From positions 246,397-310,396 of the IMG/VR virus record IMGVR_UViG_3300046542_000291: a DNA stretch of 64,000 nucleotides, one strand, 5' to 3'. Below are positions 2,672 to 54,550 of the stretch, one piece after another. A model generated the notes under the pieces. It ran no database searches and was not told the origin of the DNA. It worked only from the letters and a program-made list of their open reading frames with translations. The translations under genes and the position numbers were made by a program. Each line of letters begins with the position of its first letter. The first letter of the stretch is position 1.

Positions 2672-3118
2672 TTATCGACGTCCGCTGAACTCGCGGGGGA
2701 TCATCGACTTCAACCAACGGCGTTCAGATTTCTTTTTCTTTGGGGTGAAGGTCACGTAGTGATTACCGTACAGTGCGATGTGGGTATCGTGAATACGGCG
2801 CATTGATTGTGGCTTGATACCGTCGTTCAATGCAACGCTAATGCCCTGCTCCTTCAATACCTTCTTCCACTCATCCAGGTAGAGTGGTGGAACTGCATGG
2901 AATGCTTCGAAGTCGAACTCCACGATCTCGTGATCCCGGGCCAGAAAGCGAGCAGCCTGCATTTCATTCATCAGGTCAGGCATCATTCTACGGAACCTGG
3001 ATTCGGCGCGTGCGCTATTTACGATCACACTGATGAGCCAACCGAATAAGAACAAGAGCCATGGGACAGAAGCGTAACCCAATAATTGCATGATCATGTC
3101 AAAGTAGTTAAACGTCAT
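2672..3118 (-). CDS. membrane-anchored hypothetical protein
   Basis: N-terminal TM segment (LLGYASVPWLLFLFGWLISVIV); AAGGA SD. Confidence 0.7.
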   Translation of the reverse strand: MTFNYFDMIMQLLGYASVPWLLFLFGWLISVIVNSARAESRFRRMMPDLMNEMQAARFLARDHEIVEFDFEAFHAVPPLYLDEWKKVLKEQGISVALNDGIKPQSMRRIHDTHIALYGNHYVTFTPKKKKSERRWLKSMIPREFSGRR

Positions 3119-3153
3119 AAAAGCTTTTCCTTATTTTCAGCGTTTGAAGTGAA

Positions 3154-3324
3154 TTACAGCCCGTGGTAAGCGACTGTAAATACCAGAAAGATCAGAGTGA
3201 AAACCGTCAAGCCTCTAACGGTAATCCAACTCTTTGGTTGTTCAGGGGGATTCGGGTTGGAGCGCGGTTGTTGATCATCAGGTGTAGCTTGGCGTGGTGC
3301 GGGATCAATGTAACGAACAGCCAT
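3154..3324 (-). CDS. 56-aa tail-anchored membrane protein (not in the ORF track)
   Basis: Manual translation MAVRYIDPAPRQATPDDQQPRSNPNPPEQPKSWITVRGLTVFTLIFLVFTVAYHGL; AGAGGG SD; first ORF after an early promoter. Confidence 0.7.
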   Translation of the reverse strand: MAVRYIDPAPRQATPDDQQPRSNPNPPEQPKSWITVRGLTVFTLIFLVFTVAYHGL

Positions 3325-43520: not shown

Positions 43521-45056
43521 TTAAGACACACGGCGCACCACGGTTTTGTTGCATTTTCCTTCGAAGTGCTCGCTCTTTCGGTGATGGTACTTCACTTGCT
43601 GGGGGATGTTGATGCAGTACGTGTAGGTGAATCGAGGAGTGATGTCAGGGTACAACTTCAACTTCCTCAAACGCCCAGCGATCTGAATGTTGTCCTTCTT
43701 CGAGTCCGTGCTATGTAGCAGCAAGCACTCACGCAAGTTGGGAATGTCCACCCCGGTACCAGACGACTTCATTGTCGAAACAGTGATGTTGTTCGTCAGG
43801 AGTCTTTCATATGGACATCCCGAGACGTGCTCGTTAATGACCAGGTCTGGAAGATGTTCCTTCAGATACTTCACCAACTGTTGAATGAACACAACCGTCG
43901 CACACAGCGTTAAGCATTTCTGCTCGGGCAGCATGTCATTGACGAATATGCCATTCAAGATCCGAAGCACCATGGTGTTGTAGATTGCCAGGCGCTTCTT
44001 GTTCTTCATCATCTCCGTTTCGTAACGCATGTGGTTATACGTGTTCTTGTACGGAGTGAGGTAATCTTTCGGTGTGACTGTGGGGTCACTGTACATTAAC
44101 GCCATGACGTCGATGTACACGTCGTAGTTCGGGAGACGACACGCGGTGATCGGAGGCAACATCACCTCAATCATTTTGGTCACGTATGCGTTGCCCGTGT
44201 ACGGCGTTGCCGACAGGTAGATCTGTTTTGCCACGTTGGTGTAGATGTCAATCCGGAACACCAACCCAGGGTCTTCCTGGATCTCATCGTTGATCTGCAG
44301 GCCAACCTTCAACACCTCGTGGAAACGCGGTGGTGGAACGTTATAGCCTACGGTGTGGAGATTACCGCCCAGTCGCTCGAAAGCTTCTATATAGCCACGG
44401 TACGTCACCTGAGACATGATGATAACGTCGATCCCATCAAGATCGTCATTCATGCCTCGATCAATCAACTTCTGCAGTTCAGCCGAACCAGAGCAGGTCA
44501 TGAAACGACCGTAGATGTCTTCGTAGACATCCTGCAACGCCTCTTCCCAGATACCGAAGTACTTAGGTGGAACCATCACGAGCGTTCGACAACTTAATCC
44601 AGGATCAGCAGCAGACGCCAGAGATGTCAGCGTCTTACCTTTACCAGTTTGCAAGTCCACCCGAGCAGAACGAACCAGAGGTCTCAGGATATCTTCTTTA
44701 ATGATTTCCTGATAGTCATGCAGCGTGAACTTCTCTTTGACCCTGAACAGTGCTGGCTTTGCAGCAGGTACCGCAATGTCTGTGACTTCGATGTATTCCT
44801 TCGAGATACCGTTGTTCGCCAGATGGTTAACCAACGCATCATAGCAGTTCCGGTGAATGAACACCTGTCGGTGGTCATCCGTAATCCCGTAGTACTTCTT
44901 CTTAAGTTCCATGATCATTCGACCACGTTCCTTACGGGGTTCCTTCAACATTAAAGTTTCTAGGTACCCTTGCATCTTGTACAGTGTGTCGCGGTTGTAA
45001 CCAGATAGTCTTACGCCATGCGAATAACGCTCTGCTTTTATTAACGGTTGAACCAT
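43521..45056 (-). CDS. SF2 (RAD25/UvsW-like) helicase (phiKZ gp75-like)
   Basis: LQTGKGKT (Walker A), DEIQ, LSATP, GTGVDIPNL and QIAGRLR. Confidence 0.9.
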   Translation of the reverse strand: MVQPLIKAERYSHGVRLSGYNRDTLYKMQGYLETLMLKEPRKERGRMIMELKKKYYGITDDHRQVFIHRNCYDALVNHLANNGISKEYIEVTDIAVPAAKPALFRVKEKFTLHDYQEIIKEDILRPLVRSARVDLQTGKGKTLTSLASAADPGLSCRTLVMVPPKYFGIWEEALQDVYEDIYGRFMTCSGSAELQKLIDRGMNDDLDGIDVIIMSQVTYRGYIEAFERLGGNLHTVGYNVPPPRFHEVLKVGLQINDEIQEDPGLVFRIDIYTNVAKQIYLSATPYTGNAYVTKMIEVMLPPITACRLPNYDVYIDVMALMYSDPTVTPKDYLTPYKNTYNHMRYETEMMKNKKRLAIYNTMVLRILNGIFVNDMLPEQKCLTLCATVVFIQQLVKYLKEHLPDLVINEHVSGCPYERLLTNNITVSTMKSSGTGVDIPNLRECLLLHSTDSKKDNIQIAGRLRKLKLYPDITPRFTYTYCINIPQQVKYHHRKSEHFEGKCNKTVVRRVS

Positions 45057-45111
45057 ATAAAAATTAACGTGTTGCCAGGGACCCGAAGGTCCCCGACGCT
45101 ACGCCCTCCGC

Positions 45112-47085
45112 TTAGGCCATGACGCCCCCCAATACGGCCGAGTCGTACGGGTGGTCGTTCCTGTCTTGGTACAGGAAACTGCCTGGGTTGTTTAGTGGTT
45201 CGTGCTGCTTCTCAAACGCCATTGCACCGGCCAGAGAACGGTTCATCATCAGCTTGTTATACTTCTCAAACTGACCACTGATTCCTGGCTTCGGCAGACG
45301 ATAATCTTTGTTCGCAGCCGAACGGATCATCATAGCGTATACCAGAACTTCACAGTGAACCACATTCAGCTTGATCTTTTCATTGATCAGGCTAACAAAG
45401 GCAGCGAGCGCATCCACTGGGTTCTTGTAGTTCTTCAGGTAGGTTTTGCTAGTGAAGCCAACCTTATCTGTCGACAGTTTAGAACCATCTCCGTTGTCGC
45501 CGGAGTGAAGGAACGATTGAACCCGCTTCATCACTTCGTACATGTTCACGTGCTTATAAGGCAACGTGAGGAACGGCTCATCAAAGTCGAACCCATGGAG
45601 ATCGATGGTGATCCGGGAATCATCGAAGTCCCAACGTCCTTGCTTCTGAATGTGCTGAAGCATTTCTGTCGAAAGACTCGCCTTACGGTTGTACAGCGAG
45701 ACCGAAAGGATATCCCCTTGCTCTTGACCATCTACAGTTTTCACCAAGCCGATGTGAGTCAGCTCGGAGGCGCTAGTCGCTGGGTAAGCCGACAAGTCCT
45801 GGATCATCAAAATGTCAGCGAGGTTCTGTGCTTCCGCTCGCTTGATGATGAGTCTATATCCTTGCTCTGCCAGGTCTTTCTTTAAGTACAGCGTTTCAGC
45901 TGTTGCGCCTTCACGCAGGTAGTTCCGTTCTACACCGGTGATTTTGTATTGCTCAACCGCGGAGGTTGCATCGGTATGCTTGGTCGACAATACAGACGAG
46001 GTGATTTTGTCACCCATCGATACGGCCGACACTTGACCGATGTTGGTACCACGTGGAATGGAAAAACTCAGACGTCCGTAACAACGTGAGCAGACACCTG
46101 CCGGATCTGGATGTACGCAGCCCAAGATGGACCGCATCCGGATCTTAGTGTTAACCAAGTGCTCCTCGTTGCCACGAATCCAATCTTCCACACCGTCAGC
46201 GCGAAGGTAGTACTTACCCTTCAAGGCTTTGAGTGTCGACTTCAGAACAGGGAAGTCAACGTAGTGTGGAGTATGGCAGTCGCCTTTATGCAGGCGTTGA
46301 ACGTACTGTGCGATCAGCTGAGACTTACGGTTGAAGTACTCAGTAACACGAAGCAACTCTTTGTTGTACAGCAGTGCCTTCGTACCCGAACGCGATTCCA
46401 CCATGGAACCGTACAGATCCCAGATACCGTCGATGTAACCAACGGTTACCGGGTGTGCGAAAATGTCGGAGTTGATGTCGGTTGGATAACCACGAGGACC
46501 GAACGCTTGAAGCAACTGCTCCAGCTTCTGAGTACCCGAGCGATAACCTTCAATGATGGAGTTACCACGGAAGTTGTTGTCATCGTCAAACGCATCACGA
46601 ATCTTGGCGTAAGAGATCTTCTCGATCCCGTACGTGGACTCTTCTACGTTGGTGTTCGCTTCCCGAATCAACGGATGGTTGTACACCTCGGCAATGTCGA
46701 AGATCGACAGCGTGGCTACGTATGCCGACAGTTTCGTCGTACACTCGTTATACAACCAGTTCTTACCTTCGATAGCAAGCTTAGCCAGAACCTCCGGATC
46801 GACCGTTTCATTACTGTGAGCATGAATGCCCCAGATGACGTCATTGATATACGACACCAACGATTTCGAAGTCACCCGTGTATGGTTCAGGTGATACCCC
46901 GAAAGAATCGGTGTATCTGGGTATGCCTTGAGTGGGTACCAAAGCAGCACCGACAACTTGGTAATCCGATCTTTCACGATCAGTTCTTTCCCGTCGTCGA
47001 ATACTACTTTGTGCCACTCGCTCGGCATTGCCCAGAGTTGATCGTAGCTCAGGTTCAACAGATCCCTGGCCTTGTACGTATTCAT
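45112..47085 (-). CDS. non-virion RNA polymerase beta' C-terminal subunit (phiKZ gp74-like)
   Basis: EYFNRKSQL bridge-helix end, RSILGC...GVCSRCYG zinc site and VLSTKHT trigger loop. Confidence 0.85.
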   Translation of the reverse strand: MNTYKARDLLNLSYDQLWAMPSEWHKVVFDDGKELIVKDRITKLSVLLWYPLKAYPDTPILSGYHLNHTRVTSKSLVSYINDVIWGIHAHSNETVDPEVLAKLAIEGKNWLYNECTTKLSAYVATLSIFDIAEVYNHPLIREANTNVEESTYGIEKISYAKIRDAFDDDNNFRGNSIIEGYRSGTQKLEQLLQAFGPRGYPTDINSDIFAHPVTVGYIDGIWDLYGSMVESRSGTKALLYNKELLRVTEYFNRKSQLIAQYVQRLHKGDCHTPHYVDFPVLKSTLKALKGKYYLRADGVEDWIRGNEEHLVNTKIRMRSILGCVHPDPAGVCSRCYGRLSFSIPRGTNIGQVSAVSMGDKITSSVLSTKHTDATSAVEQYKITGVERNYLREGATAETLYLKKDLAEQGYRLIIKRAEAQNLADILMIQDLSAYPATSASELTHIGLVKTVDGQEQGDILSVSLYNRKASLSTEMLQHIQKQGRWDFDDSRITIDLHGFDFDEPFLTLPYKHVNMYEVMKRVQSFLHSGDNGDGSKLSTDKVGFTSKTYLKNYKNPVDALAAFVSLINEKIKLNVVHCEVLVYAMMIRSAANKDYRLPKPGISGQFEKYNKLMMNRSLAGAMAFEKQHEPLNNPGSFLYQDRNDHPYDSAVLGGVMA

Positions 47086-47094
47086 TCAGTCACC

Positions 47095-49224
47095 TCAGGC
47101 TGCTTGTTGAAGGTATTGGTCTGCACGGTACCGGAAACGGAGACCACGACATTCCAGCAGGTGATTCAATAACCCAACCGGACGGCTATTGCCATACGGT
47201 ACAGCTTTCCGATCTACAGCACGTGCAATATCGGTTGGTCGCTTCGCGGTAAGAATCGAGTGAACCACTGCAATGTGAGCCAGCGGGTTGTTCGTTTGAT
47301 CGAGCAGCTCGGTAGTTGGTTCTGGACCCACCACGGAGTTGTACGAACGCGTTTCCGATTCACCGAACGAACGGATAGCCGATTCACGACCAGGAGTACT
47401 GGCGCGGTCAGCGTTGTTCAGTTTCGAAGGAAGACCAAACTGTTGGGTTTTAACAGAAGCTACAGCCGACCAGTCTTCACCGATCTTCTCAAGCAGCATC
47501 ATGTACAGCGGACCAACGAGTACCGGATCGTTGGTTACTACAGTTTTGCCCACCTGATCCACGTAGGTAACCGGAGCGTACAGCGGCTTAAAGCGGCTGT
47601 TGATGATCTGGTTAACAGCAGCCATCAGATCAACTTGATCGTCAACTGGACTGTACAGGTAATATTGATCACGCAGTGTTGCACGCAGGTGGCGAGTACG
47701 ATCCGTGTCATCGATCAGCAACGACCGTTGGGTCGGAGTTACGATAGCATAGAAGTCCATGAGTTCCATGAACGCGTAGTCAACCCAATCCTTGTTAGAC
47801 AAGGCTGCATTCAGCTGGGCATCGGTTGGAGTTTCATGACGATCCATCCCGGCTTCAACACGCAAGCGTTGAACCAGGTCACGAGCGGCAGCGCCAAACC
47901 CGTGCTCGTACATCCGACCGTAGTTGGAACGACGCATGGTCGAACCGCCGAAGATGACGATGTCTACCCGATTACCATGTTGGTCAATCGGCATGTCCTT
48001 CTCAGGCTTCTCTTCGCAGACTACACCTTTACCGCCGTGGAAGTCAGTTGCCTTATAGGCACCCGATGGCTTCTTCAGAGCTTCGTAGGTAATTGCTACC
48101 CGCCACTCGTCCAAAGGTTCCAGACGATACATCCGACTCAGCTTACGCTGATCCTGTTTCACAGGCAGATGGATTTGTGCTTCTACGACCAGCTGGTGGA
48201 ACGTTTGACTGATCTTCAGGGTGTCTTTGCGACGACCCCACAGGCCAGCGTACACCTTCATGATCTCGCGATAGTAGTTCGCCAGTGCAGTGTGGTACTT
48301 AACCAACTGCTCATCCATACCCAGAGGAGTATGCGATGGGTTTACCCGATCATCACGGTACACGTTGATGTCTGTAACAGTTGCACCCGGTTCACCGATA
48401 ACTGCTCGGTCGAACGTCCGGTCCAGCATCATCAATGCTCTCGCCGTCATTTCGGCAGGAGCTAGATCTGGATCGAGATCCCGCAGTGCAAAGATCACAC
48501 CATCTTCACGGATCTTCTGGCCGATGTCCGGGAACGGTTGATAGCGAGTTTCATCGCCATACATGTTCAGGAAGAACGCTTTACGACCAGCGTTACCGAC
48601 TGCTTCGTTATATGTCCGTGGACTCAGACGTTGCAGGAACTCCGTTGAGATGATGAAACCATCTTCAATGGTGCCTGGCATGGACATGAACGCTACGTTA
48701 GCGTTGATACCCATTCCGTACAGACCGTTATCCTTCACTGCACGAGACTTAGCGATCACAGTGTTCTTGGAGAACATCGCCCCCACCGCCAAGTTCTCCC
48801 ACACTACCGGGTTACGCTCAAGGCGATACCCGAAGTCCTGGTGAAGCGAGATGTAGTCAGGTACGTGGATGATGTCAACCGTCTTGTGTTGGTCATCCCA
48901 GTGTTCGAAGACAATGGTAGTCAGTGGGTTGTGGCGAATGCCAGACCCAGACATACCACCGGTTGGGTATTTCCGAATGATGCCGATGACCATGCAGTCT
49001 TCAGGGAACCGCACGTCAAACGTGTATTCACCGTAACGCATTTCCATACCGGTTTGCACCCGGCGTGGCTCATTACCCTCACTTTGTGGAGACTGACCAA
49101 TGTGCGACAGAAACATCGCACCCCGTGCAGCAGAGGTTGTGCCGTAATAGGGGTCGAGGCAGGCGTTACCCAAAAGGGTCGCATCCAGCTCACGTCTCCG
49201 AAACGGTGGGGGTGTGCTAATCAT
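47095..49224 (-). CDS. non-virion RNA polymerase beta C-terminal subunit (phiKZ gp71-73-like), intron-less
   Basis: EDGFIIS, KATDFHGGKGVV, RSNYGR, GPLYMMLLEK and RSFGESE. Confidence 0.9.
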   Translation of the reverse strand: MISTPPPFRRRELDATLLGNACLDPYYGTTSAARGAMFLSHIGQSPQSEGNEPRRVQTGMEMRYGEYTFDVRFPEDCMVIGIIRKYPTGGMSGSGIRHNPLTTIVFEHWDDQHKTVDIIHVPDYISLHQDFGYRLERNPVVWENLAVGAMFSKNTVIAKSRAVKDNGLYGMGINANVAFMSMPGTIEDGFIISTEFLQRLSPRTYNEAVGNAGRKAFFLNMYGDETRYQPFPDIGQKIREDGVIFALRDLDPDLAPAEMTARALMMLDRTFDRAVIGEPGATVTDINVYRDDRVNPSHTPLGMDEQLVKYHTALANYYREIMKVYAGLWGRRKDTLKISQTFHQLVVEAQIHLPVKQDQRKLSRMYRLEPLDEWRVAITYEALKKPSGAYKATDFHGGKGVVCEEKPEKDMPIDQHGNRVDIVIFGGSTMRRSNYGRMYEHGFGAAARDLVQRLRVEAGMDRHETPTDAQLNAALSNKDWVDYAFMELMDFYAIVTPTQRSLLIDDTDRTRHLRATLRDQYYLYSPVDDQVDLMAAVNQIINSRFKPLYAPVTYVDQVGKTVVTNDPVLVGPLYMMLLEKIGEDWSAVASVKTQQFGLPSKLNNADRASTPGRESAIRSFGESETRSYNSVVGPEPTTELLDQTNNPLAHIAVVHSILTAKRPTDIARAVDRKAVPYGNSRPVGLLNHLLECRGLRFRYRADQYLQQAA

Positions 49225-49369
49225 TCTTTTTGTTCTCCTTCACGGGAATATCCTGGACCGACGGAATATTCCCAACGAACATTACTGCACGGCTATAAGT
49301 AACACAGCCATGCATTGGGCTAAGATTACTCGTGCCCAACAGTTCCGGACAGATCTTTTCTTTTTGCAT
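49217..49369 (-). CDS. 50-aa mini-protein homologous to the N-terminus of the adjacent nvRNAP beta subunit
   Basis: GGAG SD plus ATG at 49369; LLG..xL.P..G.....R..MF...I matches the downstream subunit without gaps; 8-bp overlap with it. Confidence 0.7.
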   Translation of the reverse strand: MQKEKICPELLGTSNLSPMHGCVTYSRAVMFVGNIPSVQDIPVKENKKND

Positions 49370-49400
49370 TGCTACTCCCATGGCCCTATCACTTGCAACA

Positions 49401-49424
49401 ATGTTATATAGATCTGAGATAAAA
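49401..49424 (-). promoter_or_regulatory. promoter, TCTCAGATCTATATAACA subclass
   Basis: Near-identical motif to 54526-54550 and 63981-64000. Confidence 0.7.
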
Positions 49425-49444
49425 TGCACTTAAAAGGTGAAGAT

Positions 49445-49810
49445 ATGGCATTTACAATTCTGACCGATATGGCGCAACCAGGAGACGACGTTTACTACGA
49501 CCCCAAATTTCGCCTGATTGCAGAAACTCACATGGTGATTCTTCGACAGGAAGATATCTCCCGGCAACAAATCGACTTAGACCTTTTCTATCAATACGAA
49601 GGTAACTTCTACGGTTACTTGGTAGAGATTGGAGTTCAGCCAGAACTCCATTGGTTGTACATGCGGGTTAACGGCATGACCAACCCAAACCAATTCGCCA
49701 AGGAAGTACGCGATCCTTACGGACGTGCGTATTCACCTGTGCTGATTCGTCCCAATGACAACATCATCAGTGGGCTTGTCCAGTACTACATGAGTCGAAA
49801 ATTTAAATGA
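49445..49810 (+). CDS. LysM-like / T4 gp53-like baseplate protein candidate (probable start MAFTILT)
   Basis: YGYLVEIGVQPELHWLYMRVNGMTNP resembles the gp53/LysM 'YG...LW.I...N...P' pattern; AAGGTG SD. Confidence 0.55.
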   Translation: MAFTILTDMAQPGDDVYYDPKFRLIAETHMVILRQEDISRQQIDLDLFYQYEGNFYGYLVEIGVQPELHWLYMRVNGMTNPNQFAKEVRDPYGRAYSPVLIRPNDNIISGLVQYYMSRKFK

Positions 49811-49812
49811 CA

Positions 49813-49838
49813 ATTGGGGAACCCGAAGGTTCCCCAAT
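49813..49838. terminator. bidirectional terminator
   Basis: attggggaacc-cgaa-ggttccccaat between convergent genes. Confidence 0.8.
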
Positions 49839-49849
49839 ATGCCGTCTTG

Positions 49850-51235
49850 TTACAGCGAGCTACCTTGCTGCGGGAATCCACCGTACTGCGGCTGCTGAGG
49901 CATCATCATTGGTTGAGGCATCATTTGCTGCGGTTGAGCGAAGATCTGCATGAACGGGTTCTGCTGCATTTGTTGCTGGTACTGCATGGCTTGTACCTGA
50001 GGCTGCAGCCATGGCAATTGAATGCCTTGGTTCTGCGGTTGTTGGAAGCCAGGCATGTTTTGCATCGGAGTAGCCATGGATGGTTGCAGCATTACCGGCT
50101 GGCCGTACTGGTTGTAAACCATCTGCGGTTGTTGTGACATCATCGGAGCAGGCTGCTGTTGGAACTGCGGCTGCTGGGATTTGAGGAAGTCACTTACCGA
50201 AATGGTGTCGCCAGGTTTGCTTGCTGTGGTTGGAGCGGCTGCATTCAAGCCAGCGCCCATCTGCGGCATCTGGCCGACCATTTGTGGAACGTACTGGTTG
50301 GCTGGTTGAGCTGCAGGTTGCTGCTGTTGTGCTTGCGCTGCGGCTGGAGCACCGGCTTCGTCGGTTTCATTCACACCACCGTCGTTACCGTTCAGTGGTG
50401 GGATCTCGTTGTAAACTTCCGGGAAGGATTCCCAGATGTTCTCGTCGTACAGAGGGAACGGTTTGATCCCCAGGTGCAACGGTTCATTGAAACGAATGAT
50501 CGACTTGTTCAGCTGGTTGCAGATTTTCCAGTACGCTTTGATCAGCGCAGTGAAGAACGGTGCAACGCGAGTAGTGGTACCCGCTGCGTACTCTTCCGGC
50601 GAATCGCCGAATGGAACGACCAGCTTGAACAGCTCCAGGATGACCTTGCCGTGTTTCTTGCCCAGGTCTACGCCCAGCACTTCCTTCTCACCGCTGTTCA
50701 GCTCGTCGATGATTGGGAAACGAATCACAGCCATGCGATTCACTTTGGTACCGTCGATGGTACCGCCATGTTTCAAGAAGACCGATACGATCTTGTTCTT
50801 CTTGTTCGCACTGGACATCAGCTTGTTGTAAGCCACCAGCGTGTTCTTGTCCGCGTTGGCCAGCTTGGCCAGTACGGTTGCCATTTCTGGCGGCAGGTCT
50901 TTGTGCAGGCTGGTATCGACAGCGACGCGCAACAGCGCATCGGTCAGGTAACCGACCATGAATGCAATGTTGGCTTTCGCCGCACGCTGCATGTGTTGCA
51001 ACACCGGTGACGTGCCTTTACGCGCCAGGTTTTCTGACAGTGGGTGGAACGGCTGATAATCTTCACCGAACCCATCACGCAGGAACTTGTTGGATGGGAA
51101 GGCCAGACGCTTACCGTCTACCTTCGCTGGTTCCAACGTACCGGTCGGAGTCAGGATACTGAACAAGTCATCCTCACCGATCGAGTAGTTGAATGCCGGG
51201 GCGATTGCCTTATAGACCTTCGAAAGGGATTGCAT
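49850..51235 (-). CDS. conserved nucleus-block protein (phiKZ gp70-like) with a Q/P/M-rich C-terminal tail
   Basis: Position between PicA and the beta subunit; last ~150 aa are low complexity. Confidence 0.65.
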   Translation of the reverse strand: MQSLSKVYKAIAPAFNYSIGEDDLFSILTPTGTLEPAKVDGKRLAFPSNKFLRDGFGEDYQPFHPLSENLARKGTSPVLQHMQRAAKANIAFMVGYLTDALLRVAVDTSLHKDLPPEMATVLAKLANADKNTLVAYNKLMSSANKKNKIVSVFLKHGGTIDGTKVNRMAVIRFPIIDELNSGEKEVLGVDLGKKHGKVILELFKLVVPFGDSPEEYAAGTTTRVAPFFTALIKAYWKICNQLNKSIIRFNEPLHLGIKPFPLYDENIWESFPEVYNEIPPLNGNDGGVNETDEAGAPAAAQAQQQQPAAQPANQYVPQMVGQMPQMGAGLNAAAPTTASKPGDTISVSDFLKSQQPQFQQQPAPMMSQQPQMVYNQYGQPVMLQPSMATPMQNMPGFQQPQNQGIQLPWLQPQVQAMQYQQQMQQNPFMQIFAQPQQMMPQPMMMPQQPQYGGFPQQGSSL

Positions 51236-52889
51236 TTACGTCACCTTGTGCGTATTGAGGGTTGTATGGGGCGGCCGATGCAACTGGATGCTGGTACGGC
51301 TGGACCATGTACTGATTGTGTTGTTGTGGAGCGGCACTGCTCAGCGAACCGCCTTGAACCGTGGTATTGGAGCCACTGTTGAAGTTGTTCGGGATCACGT
51401 TCTGAACAAGCCAGATCATGTCCGTCGAGATCTTGTTCGCCTTCGCGCCATCACGGGTGATGACTGGCGAGAACAGACCGTCCGAGAATGTCGGAGCCAC
51501 GAAGCGAGTTGGTGCTTCACCACCCAGGCTGATATCGATTACCGAATCACCGGCCAAGTCAGACGTGAGACTGATCTGGAACGGAATGCCGTTGTTGTGA
51601 GTGAGTGCGTTCAGGCAGTCTGTGCCCAAGCGACGCTCAAATTCCAGCAGGTAAGGCCGAGCATCGATACCCTCCATTACGAGCTTGGTACCTTCACCAC
51701 TGATTTGGAACGCGTAGGTACCCGGCATGTTGCCATTCGTTACTGCAATGGTCACCAGACGCAGGTAGTTGTCCATCATGATCGATGGGATGGTTTGGGC
51801 CAGCATCGACGCTGCGATCGAAGTTGGGTCCGCGCCTTTGAAGTGGCAGGACTGTTCCGCATAGTTTACCTTGCGGATCGACTGGCCGTTGTCCATGGAG
51901 TACTTGGTGACTTCACCGTAGCGGAGCGTGTCCGGGAATTCCCGGTTCAGATCCGACAGCGTGATGAAACCACGTTCCATGTAACCACAGCGTTCCTTCA
52001 AGATAGCCAGGAAGGTGTTCTTGTGGATGTCGTCGTTTTGTACGTGAGCCTGTGCTTCGCCCAACAACAGTTCCATGTTGGAAGCTGTGTCATCGAAACC
52101 TTCAGCCGCCATGGCTGCTTCCTTCACGGAATGCTGGAAAGCGTTCAGCGAGTTGGAAACGTAGCGAGTCGGAGAAGTGTCCTGACGATGGGAGTACTGA
52201 TACGCACCACACTCACCAACCATTGTACGGTAGTCGTACGCACGGTTGACTGTGCCCGGGAATGCCCCGGACTGTTGCAGACGGTTTACGGTCTGCAGAG
52301 TTTGGCCGATCGAGAAGACGTCTTCAGGACGGACCAGGTGAGATGCTGCTGTCGAGTAGTAACCATTCGCACCGGCGTTCATGTCGAGCGGCGTTACGAT
52401 CTGGTTGGACGAAACGATTTGTGCATGCTTCTGCATGCCCATCGGTGTGTGCTTCATCGCTTCCGTGATCACAGTCTCGGAGTTGAAGTAGATCCGCATG
52501 TTCGGATCAAGGTAGTTCATCGACGCATCACACTGGTCGGTGTAAACGAAGAAGATCCGTTGGGTAGTGGTACCCTTGTAGATTGGATGCTCTTCACGAA
52601 CACGCAGCATGCCACGGAAACGGCGGGAGTTCCAACCGTTAGCGATACCAACTGCACCTTCGGTCATTGCAGAAGGTTTTACGATTTCACCCGCGAGCGA
52701 CTGTACAGCGGACACGCCAAGGTTAGCGCCCCCACGAGTTGCCCGCGCCAGATTTTCGATAACGCTTTCGTTGACGTGGACCTGGAACGGCCGAAGCTGT
52801 TGTTCCTGATAGGTCCCTGTCTGGGTCAGAAGGAACATGTCAACGCGAACGTTGGCATTACCCAGACCTGGCATGGAGAAATTGGACAT
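51210..52889 (-). CDS. picA: phage-nucleus protein import factor PicA/Imp1 (phiKZ gp69-like)
   Basis: Synteny directly after the gp68 homolog; size; motifs TGTYQEQQLRPF, IANGWNSRRFR and RPEDVF. Identification is inferred. Confidence 0.7.
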   Translation of the reverse strand: MSNFSMPGLGNANVRVDMFLLTQTGTYQEQQLRPFQVHVNESVIENLARATRGGANLGVSAVQSLAGEIVKPSAMTEGAVGIANGWNSRRFRGMLRVREEHPIYKGTTTQRIFFVYTDQCDASMNYLDPNMRIYFNSETVITEAMKHTPMGMQKHAQIVSSNQIVTPLDMNAGANGYYSTAASHLVRPEDVFSIGQTLQTVNRLQQSGAFPGTVNRAYDYRTMVGECGAYQYSHRQDTSPTRYVSNSLNAFQHSVKEAAMAAEGFDDTASNMELLLGEAQAHVQNDDIHKNTFLAILKERCGYMERGFITLSDLNREFPDTLRYGEVTKYSMDNGQSIRKVNYAEQSCHFKGADPTSIAASMLAQTIPSIMMDNYLRLVTIAVTNGNMPGTYAFQISGEGTKLVMEGIDARPYLLEFERRLGTDCLNALTHNNGIPFQISLTSDLAGDSVIDISLGGEAPTRFVAPTFSDGLFSPVITRDGAKANKISTDMIWLVQNVIPNNFNSGSNTTVQGGSLSSAAPQQHNQYMVQPYQHPVASAAPYNPQYAQGDVNAIPFEGL

Positions 52890-52915
52890 GGTGATACCTC
52901 TTGTGGATTGTGCAG

Positions 52916-54496
52916 TTACTTATTGAGATTACCGAGGTGAATAACCAGCTCAGTGATTGTTGCTTTGATCGTCGGTGGAACGATCAGTACGTTCGTGCCG
53001 GACACTTGACCGGCATCCTTGAACAACTGGTCTGGACCTCGATACACCCAGTGACTGGAGTGGATGGAGGCGTTCACGTTGTTAATCGCAATGCCTGCCA
53101 TGTTATCCGTCTTGAGTGCGGTACCGTTGTTCATGTACTGAGGAGCTTTCTGATGCGGAAACAACCGAATCATGTCTTCTTTGTACTTGATTGGGATACG
53201 CGCGTTAGAACGCGGTTGGCTGAGTTGGTTCTGAGACTGGTAGTCGCCGTACGTCACCAAGTCCACTTGCATGAACACCGCGATGTCTTTGAAACCCCAA
53301 TGCCAGATCAACGCTTGCGCTGCAGCCAACATGTTGTTCACTGCCACCTTGTTGATGTGGTAGAACGCTCGTGCTGGGAATGACCGAGCCATGACCCATT
53401 GCGCCAGTTTGATCTGGTGCGGGTAGATCGGAGTAGAAGCCACATTACTGATAGCATCCACACACAGCTTGAGTTTACCCAGATCGATTGTTGGATCAAC
53501 CTTTCGTGCCAACTTCAGCACGTTCAGCGCATCGACGTTGAATGCTTCGATGTCTCCAGGGGAAACACGATGCTTAGTCTTGTGCGCTTCGATGAACGAA
53601 GTCTTATCGTCATCGTCCCCACCGGACTCAGGCCGCTTTTCGTTTACACGATCAGCAGTCGTACGCTCGGCTGGGTTAAGGTTCGACTTCACGTAGCGAT
53701 ACGTGTTTGCCACGATCGAGTGAGAGGTCGGATCATCCAGTGGAACAATCGTCAAACGACGGACCAGGACTTTGGATTGGAGATGCACCGGTACTTCGAC
53801 CGACGACATGCCACGCCACAGCTGACCCAGAGTTGTTGCTTCGGCTTCCACGCAGAACCTGACGTAGCCAGCCAACTTTTCAAACGCGGTGTCAACATCC
53901 TCACCATGAGGACCTTTCTCACCGACTGGCCAGTGTGCGATTTCGCAGTCACTGATCAGGCCGACTACTTCGTTCTCCTTATGGAGTTCGTTCTCAGTAC
54001 CGGCTTCGATGTACTCACCCCAAATAGGGATCATTGGTCGAACAGCCAGTGCCACAGTAGCCAGGTTGATGTATTCGTGTTCCAGATACGTCTGGTCCAC
54101 TTTGTTGTAACGGGACTCGGCAGTAATCTTCTTCTCGACTTCTACCGGGATGTGCAAGTTCCCAACCGTCATCAACCAACGACGCATGTCATTCATCGAC
54201 AACCGTTCGTACAGCTCACGGATGTAGTAGCGCAAAGACATCGCAACCCGCATGCTATCCAACGGCATATCCAAGATATCCCGAATTCGCGAGTAGCAAT
54301 TCCAGATATGGTCCTTGTCTTCCTCGCTAACAAAGCTGCTATTAAGGAAGCCATTGAACTCTTTGAACACACGCTGCTGGTCTGGCAGTTTTACTTTGGC
54401 GTATGCCTTCGTTGAGAAGGCGATCTGTTGCATTTTGTGCTCTACGGTGACCTGAGTAAAGCCGTTACCCTGAACACCAGTGACGGTAAGCTGCAT
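52916..54496 (-). CDS. nvRNAP promoter-specificity subunit (phiKZ gp68-like)
   Basis: 526 aa; TYLEHEYINL...RPMIPIWGEYI; synteny. Confidence 0.75.
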   Translation of the reverse strand: MQLTVTGVQGNGFTQVTVEHKMQQIAFSTKAYAKVKLPDQQRVFKEFNGFLNSSFVSEEDKDHIWNCYSRIRDILDMPLDSMRVAMSLRYYIRELYERLSMNDMRRWLMTVGNLHIPVEVEKKITAESRYNKVDQTYLEHEYINLATVALAVRPMIPIWGEYIEAGTENELHKENEVVGLISDCEIAHWPVGEKGPHGEDVDTAFEKLAGYVRFCVEAEATTLGQLWRGMSSVEVPVHLQSKVLVRRLTIVPLDDPTSHSIVANTYRYVKSNLNPAERTTADRVNEKRPESGGDDDDKTSFIEAHKTKHRVSPGDIEAFNVDALNVLKLARKVDPTIDLGKLKLCVDAISNVASTPIYPHQIKLAQWVMARSFPARAFYHINKVAVNNMLAAAQALIWHWGFKDIAVFMQVDLVTYGDYQSQNQLSQPRSNARIPIKYKEDMIRLFPHQKAPQYMNNGTALKTDNMAGIAINNVNASIHSSHWVYRGPDQLFKDAGQVSGTNVLIVPPTIKATITELVIHLGNLNK

Positions 54497-54525: not shown

Positions 54526-54550
54526 ATGTAATATAGATCTGAGATTTTTT
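54526..54550 (-). promoter_or_regulatory. promoter AAAAAATCTCAGATCTATATTACAT
   Basis: Contains TATATTAC about 30 bp upstream of the gp68-like start. Confidence 0.8.

What the first reader, a model, noticed from the sequence alone, without database searches (positions are those of the whole stretch)
49217..49369. Mini-gene that copies the N-terminus of the nvRNAP beta subunit it precedes: candidate RNAP-mimic regulator or assembly peptide
Seen: the 50-aa ORF MQKEKICPELLGTSNLSPMHGCVTYSRAVMFVGNIPSVQDIPVKENKKND has its own GGAG SD. It is the first gene after the promoter at 49401-49424, and its stop overlaps the beta-subunit start (ATGATTAG). It aligns without gaps to the beta N-terminus: LLGTSNLSPMHGCVTYSRAVMFVGNI vs LLGNACLDPYYGTTSAARGAMFLSHI, 10 of 26 identical (L,L,G,L,P,G,R,M,F,I). 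Known: this segment corresponds to the bacterial beta 'LIPFLEHDDANRALM' region, near where phiKZ-type beta is split into two polypeptides. Inference: the retained residues look like the structurally conserved ones and the intervening residues have diverged, which suggests selection at the protein level. The peptide may dock on the N-half beta subunit (gp123-like) as a placeholder/chaperone, a timing inhibitor of nvRNAP assembly, or a decoy for host or rival-phage factors. I know of no description of such a gene.
Basis: partly seen in the sequence, partly recalled or inferred. Interest (0 to 1): 0.85.

Follow-up and report, generated by a model that had tools for sequence, protein, structure and literature searches.

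The report
Mini-gene copying polymerase subunit's start
A 50-codon gene in front of a giant phage's own RNA polymerase gene encodes a free-standing copy of that subunit's first conserved stretch. It is kept intact under selection in the three nearest relatives, with a probable degenerate version in the model phage phiKZ, so it is a real small protein whose role (probably tuning polymerase assembly or activity) is untested.

Summary
The ORF at 49217-49369 (-) has a GGGAG ribosome-binding site. Its stop overlaps the start of the 709-aa non-virion RNA polymerase (nvRNAP) beta C-half gene by 8 nt. It matches that protein's N-terminus at 10/26 residues (profile score 18 bits, 0 of 1000 shuffles).

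It is neither chance nor decay. The three nearest relatives (SRA assemblies, beta 74-79% identical) carry the same mini-gene with the same 8-nt overlap. They show only in-frame length changes, no stops, and fewer amino-acid-changing than silent differences in all six pairs (omega about 0.4, against 0.05-0.13 for beta). One member hits phage beta N-termini in a whole-database search (E about 1e-4).

Weaker probable homologues that keep the R-x-x-M-F core are phiKZ PHIKZ070.1 and the small ORF of a sister lineage. D6/Psa21-like phages and outgroups lack the gene. Most phiKZ-like genomes carry an unrelated 39-aa ORF in its place.

Published phiKZ data show PHIKZ070.1 is transcribed and tolerates transposon insertions. 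Active nvRNAP also assembles without it.

Best reading: a co-translated micro-protein born from a partial 5' duplication, acting as a dispensable mimic of the beta C-half N-terminal helix-loop-helix. The mechanism is inferred, not shown.

The parts
49401..49415 (-). Conserved AT-rich early-promoter-like motif (AGATCTATATAACAT)
   Evidence: TCTATAT is invariant in the window, D6, RVTF4, Psa21 and PhiPA3 within a variable spacer. It is also present in phiKZ/KTN4 and L037-L039. Exact site. Promoter type per PMC7598289; identity as a promoter is inferred.
49375..49379 (-). Shine-Dalgarno (GGGAG) of the mini-ORF, 5 nt before its ATG
   Evidence: Read from the sequence. Relatives have GGAGG/GGAG at the same place.
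49217..49369 (-). Mini-ORF, 50 aa plus stop
   Evidence: It has no in-frame stops, against 2 and 4 in the other frames, and 3.9% of shuffles stay open. Codon-usage log-likelihood is +13 bits in frame, against -51 and -27 out of frame. Orthologues: L037 2332-2508, L038 2344-2508, L039 3001-3165.
49265..49354 (-). Beta-like core of the mini-protein (residues 6-35: I-C-P-E-L-L-G ... S-R-A-V-M-F-V-G-N-I)
   Evidence: Aligned to the beta N-terminal profile at 18.3 bits. R27 and M30 fall in the only two columns invariant across minis plus 36 beta N-termini. Low-confidence AF2 model (pLDDT 60) with helices at 8-14 and 25-33, in register with beta helices at 15-23 and 32-44.
49235..49240 (-). Shine-Dalgarno (AAGGAG) of the beta gene, embedded in the 3' end of the mini-ORF
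   Evidence: The same GTGAAGGAGAA block is present in L038 and L039 (alignment).
49217..49224 (-). 8-nt stop/start overlap ATGATTAG (translational coupling geometry)
   Evidence: The same 8-nt ATGnnTAR overlap occurs in L037, L038 and L039. An 8-nt overlap ending in TGA (ATGnnTGA) occurs in KTN4 and 201phi2-1.
47095..49224 (-). nvRNAP beta C-half gene (phiKZ gp71-73 homologue), 709 aa, uninterrupted
   Evidence: E=1e-74 to PDB 7OGP chain C over the N-terminal 200 residues queried. Homologues carry PF00562. AF2 model pLDDT 85.
49099..49188 (-). Segment of beta (residues 13-42) that the mini-ORF copies
   Evidence: Predicted as short helix, loop, long helix with pLDDT about 80-91.
45112..47085 (-). 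Next gene of the operon: 657-aa nvRNAP subunit, positional counterpart of phiKZ gp74 (beta-prime C-half by position)
   Evidence: phrog_3015 'RNA polymerase beta subunit', E=1e-233. It occupies the gp74 position in phiKZ. The beta-prime assignment rests on synteny and the literature, not on the PHROG label.
49445..49810 (+). Divergent 121-aa gene (PHIKZ070.01-like) that bounds the intergenic region
   Evidence: phrog_3455, E=1e-32. Relatives start at M-A-F-T-I-L.

Best explanation
Shown:
- The mini-ORF is a genuine, conserved protein-coding gene.
- It arose by partial duplication of the 5' end of the nvRNAP beta C-half gene.
- It is the first cistron of the early beta operon, and its stop overlaps the beta start by 8 nt.
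- Its product is a free copy of the helix-loop-helix at the N-terminus of the beta C-half.
- It keeps L-L-G, the first residue of the L-x-P element, and R-x-x-M-F, including the two residues invariant in all beta homologues.
- It has lost the downstream G-Q-x-P...E-P-R-R part.

Inferred: the peptide is made together with beta and acts in trans as a structural mimic of that segment. It would transiently occupy or compete for the site on the partner subunits (the gp123-like beta N-half and the beta-prime N-half) where the beta C-half N-terminus packs. That would tune nvRNAP assembly or activity. It would be an accessory factor that is useful but dispensable, not a stoichiometric subunit.
For: - Homology to the beta N-terminus: (18-34 bits for the four members, 0/1000 shuffles each); the L038 member hits PhiPA3/Noxifer beta N-termini at E about 1e-4 across 2.3 Gb; hits to RNAP-beta PHROGs at profile positions 5-50.
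- Conservation: orthologues in L037, L038 and L039 with identical gene order and the same 8-nt overlap.
- Selection: pN<pS in all six pairs, Fisher p from <1e-4 to 0.02 (the six pairs are not independent comparisons). Omega is 0.40 for the one unsaturated pair, against 0.04-0.13 for beta. Length differences are all multiples of 3, including two 6-nt indels. The ORF frame is open in 6 lineages, while other frames hold 1-9 stops. Codon usage is gene-like.
- No gene conversion: minis are no closer to their cognate beta than to other betas, and synonymous sites differ.
- Residues kept among minis include the beta-invariant Arg and Met.
- Predicted helices are in register with those of beta.
- Probable remote members keeping R-x-x-M-F: PHIKZ070.1 (10.6 bits, 0/2000 shuffles) and the L068 ORF (6.6 bits, 3/2000). 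They are the only further hits among 144 upstream translations.
- The phiKZ homologue is transcribed with gp71.
Against: - There is no direct evidence that the peptide is made or binds anything. I found no proteomic record for PHIKZ070.1.
- Active recombinant phiKZ nvRNAP assembles from five proteins without it, and the native enzyme shows five polypeptides.
- PHIKZ070.1 tolerates Tn insertions: 3 filtered sites and 135 reads, amid neighbours with none.
- About 45 phiKZ-like genomes carry an unrelated 39-aa ORF instead.
- The D6/Psa21-like clade nested next to the window has lost the gene.
- The peptide alone gives no confident fold (pLDDT 60), and that MSA included beta segments, so the helix register is not independent evidence.
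- The correlation between mini and beta column conservation is only marginal (rho 0.24, p about 0.05-0.1).
- Only four clear members are known, all from metagenomes.
Confidence: 0.45

Rival explanations
1. Coupling leader. The ORF matters mainly as a translated spacer. Ribosomes that finish it reinitiate at the overlapping beta start, setting beta output, and the peptide itself is of little or no importance.
For: - The tight junction is conserved: an 8-nt overlap in the window, L037-39, KTN4 and 201phi2-1, and a 2-3-nt gap in phiKZ and L068.
- Wherever extra DNA lies between promoter and beta, it is almost always one open ORF, even when the peptide is unrelated: the KTN4 39-aa ORF and the 201phi2-1 gp128 family.
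- The peptide sequence is replaceable within the phiKZ species.
Against: - It does not explain retention of the beta motif, with pN<pS at saturated synonymous sites in the window clade.
- Beta has its own good AAGGAG site.
- Relatives without any upstream ORF express beta directly from the same promoter distance, with TTG/GTG starts.
- Tn insertions in PHIKZ070.1 are tolerated although gp71 is essential.
Confidence: 0.25
2. Weapon or decoy in phage-phage or phage-host conflict. The mimic poisons nvRNAP assembly of co-infecting relatives, or soaks up a factor that recognises the beta N-terminus.
For: - Fast non-synonymous evolution (dN 4-10 times that of beta).
- Patchy distribution with losses.
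- A hypervariable island flanked by near-identical DNA within one species.
- Dispensable in single infection in the laboratory.
Against: - This is purely circumstantial. The motif it keeps is the part conserved in all betas, so it would not discriminate self from rival.
- No co-variation with the cognate beta.
Confidence: 0.12
3. Functionless remnant of a partial duplication or of a recombination that replaced the beta 5' end. It is still open by luck.
For: - The mini ATG lies exactly where beta starts in D6-like phages, 36 nt after TCTATAT.
- PhiPA3 shows a 3-codon stub plus spacer that looks like decay.
- The gene has been lost in several lineages.
Against: - Open frame in six lineages, with a 0.6-6% chance each.
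- In-frame indels only, and pN<pS in every pair.
- Gene-like codon usage.
- Motif residues retained although synonymous sites are saturated.
- No donor lineage found among 1.84 billion representatives.
Confidence: 0.08
4. The mini-ORF is joined to beta by programmed frameshifting, giving an N-terminally extended isoform.
For: The window has C-AAA-AAG just before the junction.
Against: - A -1 slip does not enter the beta frame.
- The beta frame has a stop 5 codons before its ATG.
- The slippery-like run is absent in L038 and L039 (alignment).
- The product would carry the motif twice.
Confidence: 0.02

Closest known systems
PHIKZ070.1 (YP_009639898) of Pseudomonas phage phiKZ, annotated hypothetical protein
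   Same: Small ORF (56 aa) between the same conserved early-promoter motif and the gp71 start, transcribed with gp71. It shares the G-G-V-R-G-M-M-F core with the window-clade peptides.
   Different: - It lacks the L-L-G segment.
- Its similarity to the beta profile itself is marginal (1.2 bits).
- It has a 3-nt gap instead of an 8-nt overlap.
- It is present in only 2 of about 48 phiKZ-like genomes.
- Its function has never been studied.
201phi2-1 gp128 / Viktualia CDS0322 / KTN4_094: other small ORFs in the same slot
   Same: Same position. Same 8-nt overlap with the beta start in 201phi2-1 and KTN4, about 13 nt by annotation in Viktualia. Similar size (39-59 aa).
   Different: No detectable similarity to beta or to the window peptide. 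The gp128 group forms its own family, with an [AK]Y[AS][LV]YN motif.
MicroProteins (miPs) of eukaryotes, e.g. LITTLE ZIPPER or Id proteins (from general knowledge)
   Same: A short protein derived from, and resembling, one interaction segment of a larger protein. It is thought to act by occupying that segment's partners.
   Different: Those are separate loci regulating transcription-factor dimers. Here the copy is a neighbouring cistron of a phage RNA polymerase subunit, and binding is not demonstrated.
Bacterial leader peptides and translationally coupled upstream ORFs (from general knowledge)
   Same: Short ORF at the 5' end of the mRNA with a stop/start overlap onto the main gene.
   Different: Known leaders do not copy the protein they precede, and their sequence constraint (if any) concerns ribosome stalling.
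Split beta subunits of jumbo-phage nvRNAP (gp123 + gp71-73; PDB 7OGP)
   Same: The copied segment is the N-terminus created by that split.
   Different: The mini-protein is an extra, sixth product. It is not one of the five polypeptides of the purified enzyme.

Membership tests
Beta-N-terminus-like mini-protein family (window, L037, L038, L039) | Small ORF immediately upstream of the nvRNAP beta C-half gene, overlapping its ATG by 8 nt | tested here: met
Beta-N-terminus-like mini-protein family (window, L037, L038, L039) | Significant match to the beta N-terminal profile (L-L-G / L-x-P / R-x-x-M-F) | tested here: met
   18.3 bits for the window peptide and 20-34 bits for the others, with 0/1000 shuffles each. 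The family profile recovers all four and nothing else except phiKZ and L068.
Beta-N-terminus-like mini-protein family (window, L037, L038, L039) | Maintained as coding sequence (purifying selection) | tested here: met
PHIKZ070.1 homologue | Sequence similarity beyond chance between window-clade peptides and PHIKZ070.1 | tested here: inconclusive
   10.6 bits over a 14-residue core, 0/2000 shuffles, and the best non-family hit in the synteny control. The match is short and rests on one motif.
Decaying partial duplication / pseudogene | Frameshifts or stops in relatives; dN/dS near 1 | tested here: not met
   No stops, in-frame indels only, pN<pS in all pairs.
MicroProtein-type mimic | Small protein homologous to one segment of a larger protein | tested here: met
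MicroProtein-type mimic | Binds the partners of that segment and alters complex formation | not testable with these tools
   No multimer prediction or binding assay was available. Monomer AF2 is uninformative.
Regulatory leader / coupled upstream ORF | Translation of the ORF changes translation of the downstream gene | not testable with these tools
   The geometry fits (8-nt overlap). There is no conserved RNA structure of note: -12 kcal/mol over 286 columns.
RNA polymerase beta subunit (Pfam PF00562) | Passes the family model | tested here: not met
   No Pfam hit for any mini, nor for the first 100 aa of beta, even at E<=10. The peptide is a fragment homologue, not a subunit.

The most novel reading that the evidence does not exclude
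The peptide is a swap-in or blocking module for the polymerase's catalytic-core segment. By replacing or displacing the beta C-half N-terminal helix-loop-helix (which carries the invariant Arg), it would create an altered or inactive nvRNAP form. One possibility is the postulated alternative form needed for middle promoters (mentioned in PMC7598289). Another is a dominant-negative agent against the nvRNAP of co-infecting rival phages. Either would be the first natural micro-protein regulator of a multisubunit RNA polymerase built from a piece of the enzyme itself.
Probability: 0.12. Interest if true: 0.9.

Novelty: new variant of a known kind. Interest (0 to 1): 0.62.

Why it matters
Jumbo-phage nvRNAPs lack the alpha and omega assembly subunits, and both large subunits are split. 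How the pieces find each other and are controlled is an open question (PMC7598289).

A conserved, co-expressed peptide that copies the junction segment of the split beta subunit is a natural candidate for an assembly or activity modulator. It is also a ready-made probe or inhibitor design for this enzyme class.

Because a probable homologue (PHIKZ070.1) exists in the genetically tractable phiKZ, where transposon mutants already exist, the idea can be tested directly.

The locus also gives a clean example of gene birth by partial duplication of a neighbour's 5' end in a virus. In addition, it is a small-gene slot that different lineages fill with different peptides.

Tried and rejected
1. Foreign-donor idea. 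The peptide shares P-E-L and S-R-A-x-M-F-x-G-N with the distant DT01-type beta (15/38), which suggested a scar from a replaced allele. phmmer against 1.84 billion representatives found no donor. The four hits besides self are repeat-driven matches to giant adhesin-like proteins. The discovery of orthologous minis made this idea unnecessary.
2. Singleton idea. The first searches found no relative with the ORF. Relatives appeared only through beta homologues in SRA assemblies.
3. Gene conversion with the cognate beta: rejected.
4. Intron or other RNA element: no Rfam hit in 44000-53000. The consensus RNA fold is weak.
5. Frameshift fusion: rejected (see rivals).
6. ESM Atlas look-alikes scored 0.83 or less and were uninformative. 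Pfam gave nothing.
7. Scans of IMG/VR and JGI metagenomes with beta patterns found no further members.
8. AF2 of the peptide had low confidence, so no fold search was run.
I left that row out and did not send it elsewhere.
10. Similarity of KTN4_094, 201phi2-1 gp128, Viktualia and Phabio gp111 to beta or to the minis: none.
Full report
**What is there**

The window is part of IMG/VR contig UViG_3300046542_000291, 310 kb. It is a chimallivirus-like jumbo phage whose nearest named relatives are Pseudomonas phages D6, Psa21, RVTF4 and PhiPA3, at only about 70% nucleotide identity.

The minus strand carries, in order:
- a conserved AT-rich block (49401-49415);
- GGGAG (49379-49375);
- a 50-codon ORF (49369-49217);
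- the 709-aa nvRNAP beta C-half gene (49224-47095, homologous to phiKZ gp71-73, PDB 7OGP chain C, E=1e-74);
- a 657-aa RNA polymerase subunit in the position of phiKZ gp74, the beta-prime C-half (47085-45112).

The stop of the small ORF overlaps the beta start (ATGATTAG), and beta's own AAGGAG lies inside the small ORF. BLASTP gives 10/34 and E=6e-5 for the single comparison. A profile of 117 beta N-termini gives 18.3 bits, and none of 1000 shuffles reaches that.

**First impression, later overturned**

D6, RVTF4 and Psa21 have only about 70 nt between the divergent 120-aa gene and beta. Beta there starts with TTG or GTG exactly 36 nt after TCTATAT, which is where the window's mini-ORF starts. 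The peptide had no relative among 5.8 billion proteins of similar length except itself. phmmer against 1.84 billion representatives gave only repeat-driven chance hits. At that stage a lineage-specific scar seemed likely.

**The family**

Searching with the beta protein found two closer relatives in SRA assemblies: P0007 (79%) and P0063 (74%). Both contigs carry a called small gene directly upstream of beta with the same 8-nt overlap: L037 2332-2508 (58 aa) and L038 2344-2508 (54 aa). A profile of the three found a fourth member, P0128 in L039 at 3001-3165.

All four share I-[CD]-P-x-L-L-G, the Leu that opens the L-x-P element (three of the four keep L-[NS]-P; the L039 member has L-N-L), R-[AG]-[AV]-M-F and a Lys/Glu-rich tail. 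They score 18-34 bits against the beta N-terminal profile.

The L038 member, used as a tblastn query against 2.3 Gb of phage genomes, hits the N-termini of PhiPA3 and Noxifer beta at E about 1e-4 and phiKZ gp71 at 5e-3. It also hits the N-terminal 50 positions of two RNAP-beta PHROGs. Homology to the beta N-terminus is therefore significant at database scale, not only in the pairwise comparison.

**Selection**

Synonymous sites between the minis are mostly saturated. Even so:
- the frame is open in every lineage, while the other frames hold 1-9 stops, and only 0.6-6% of shuffles stay open;
- lengths differ by multiples of three, including two clean 6-nt indels between L038 and L039;
- codon usage is gene-like in frame only;
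- pN<pS in all six pairs (Fisher p from <1e-4 to 0.02; the pairs share sequences, so these tests are not independent), also after removing the ends that overlap ribosome-binding signals.

For the one unsaturated pair, omega is about 0.40, against 0.04-0.13 for beta.

The minis are no closer to their own beta than to other betas, so gene conversion does not explain the motif.

The minis have lost the following G-Q-x-P and E-P-R-R elements, which are nearly invariant in beta.

**Distribution and history**

A beta tree places the window as sister to the D6-like/L069 clade, which lacks the gene (100/99 support). L037-39 come next (80/61). Outgroups (P0037, P0040, L017, Noxifer, P0050, P0026) have a plain 72-117-nt spacer. 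The mini-gene is therefore derived, and at least one loss must be inferred.

In the phiKZ clade the same slot holds three different ORFs:
- PHIKZ070.1 (56 aa; core G-G-V-R-G-M-M-F; 10.6 bits to the mini profile, 0/2000 shuffles);
- a 51-aa ORF with A-S-R-S-S-M-F-V in the sister lineage L068 (6.6 bits, 3/2000);
- an unrelated 39-aa ORF in KTN4 and about 45 other genomes.

In a control of 144 upstream translations from 48 loci, only the four members plus phiKZ and L068 score 4 bits or more.

phiKZ and KTN4 are identical up to the promoter motif, and again from beta codon 4 onward. They are unalignable across the small ORF.

201phi2-1, Viktualia, L070 and Phabio carry yet another small-protein family there.

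**Published functional data on the phiKZ counterpart**

- PHIKZ070.1 is transcribed with gp71 (count tables in PMC10914614 and PMC12571901).
- In phage TnSeq it has 3 filtered insertion sites and 135 reads (5 sites and 238 reads unfiltered), inside a block of genes with none (PMC12676376).
- Native nvRNAP has five polypeptides. Recombinant enzyme described as functionally equivalent to native is made from those five genes alone (PMC4666361, PMC7618050).
- I found no paper on its function and no proteomic record.

**Structure**

AF2 of the window's beta (pLDDT 85) predicts a short helix at residues 15-23, a loop, and a long helix at 32-44. AF2 of the peptide is of low confidence (pLDDT 60). It shows helices at 8-14 and 25-33, the same register. 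That MSA contained beta segments, so this is consistency, not proof. The peptide probably has no autonomous fold.

**Interpretation**

Shown: a real, selected small gene that is a truncated paralogue of its neighbour's N-terminus and is positioned for co-translation.

Inferred: the peptide acts as a mimic of the junction segment of the split beta subunit, modulating assembly or activity as a non-essential accessory (confidence 0.45).

The main rival is a coupling leader whose peptide is secondary (0.25). This is supported by the replaceability of the peptide in phiKZ-like phages, but it does not explain motif retention in the window clade. A conflict or decoy role (0.12) fits the fast evolution and patchiness but has no direct support. 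Functionless decay (0.08) and frameshift fusion (0.02) are disfavoured.

**Novelty**

The phiKZ ORF is annotated but uncharacterised. Its relation, and that of the window family, to the beta N-terminus appears undescribed in the searched literature.

Conceptually the closest kind is the micro-protein, a truncated paralogue that mimics an interaction segment. Here it appears in a new setting: as an upstream cistron of a viral multisubunit RNA polymerase gene.

Noticed in passing
L063 2070-2285 vs L007 855-1000 (phiKZ vs KTN4): Two genomes of one species are identical up to the early-promoter motif and again from beta codon ~4. The small ORF between them is completely different (56-aa PHIKZ070.1 vs 39-aa KTN4_094). 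The phiKZ allele occurs in only 2 records, the KTN4 allele in about 45.
   Followed up: partly
L065 705-884, L066 710-889, L070 387-704, L067 257-613: A second, unrelated small-protein family (motif [AK]Y[AS][LV]YN..[MV]..EE) sits upstream of the nvRNAP beta C-half gene in 201phi2-1 (gp128), Viktualia, an SRA contig and Phabio (gp110, where gp111 intervenes). The slot appears to be a landing place for different small genes.
   Followed up: partly
L001 1973, L003 1979, L004 1970 and IMG/VR loci L009-L014: D6/Psa21/RVTF4-type phages start the essential beta C-half gene with TTG or GTG, 36 nt after TCTATAT. This is the same distance at which the window's mini-ORF ATG lies.
   Followed up: no
L002 1935-2046 (PhiPA3): At the ancestral start position PhiPA3 has SD + ATG AAG CGT TAA (3 codons), followed by a ~70-nt non-coding spacer before beta. 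It may be a decayed small ORF.
   Followed up: no
window 47095-49224; L038 3709-5155; L039; L002; L068: The beta C-half gene is interrupted after ...D-x-H-G-G in L038, L039, PhiPA3, phiKZ and L068. The interruption was seen with an HNH-domain ORF in L038 and L068, and corresponds to PHIKZ072 in phiKZ. The window and L037 are uninterrupted at that site.
   Followed up: no
window 49114-49224: The public gene call for the window's beta (P0006, 673 aa) starts at Met37, inside the conserved R-G-A-M-F motif. All homologues support the 709-aa start at 49224.
   Followed up: yes
window 49424-49810 (+): The divergent 120-aa gene (phrog_3455) most likely starts at 49445 (M-A-F-T-I-L, as in relatives). 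Its phiKZ homologue PHIKZ070.01 has no filtered transposon insertions (6 reads at 5 sites unfiltered), so it may be essential, yet it has no known function.
   Followed up: partly
window 54529-54539 (-): A second near-copy of the early-promoter-like block (GATCTATATTA) occurs 5 kb away. I did not check whether it heads another early operon.
   Followed up: no
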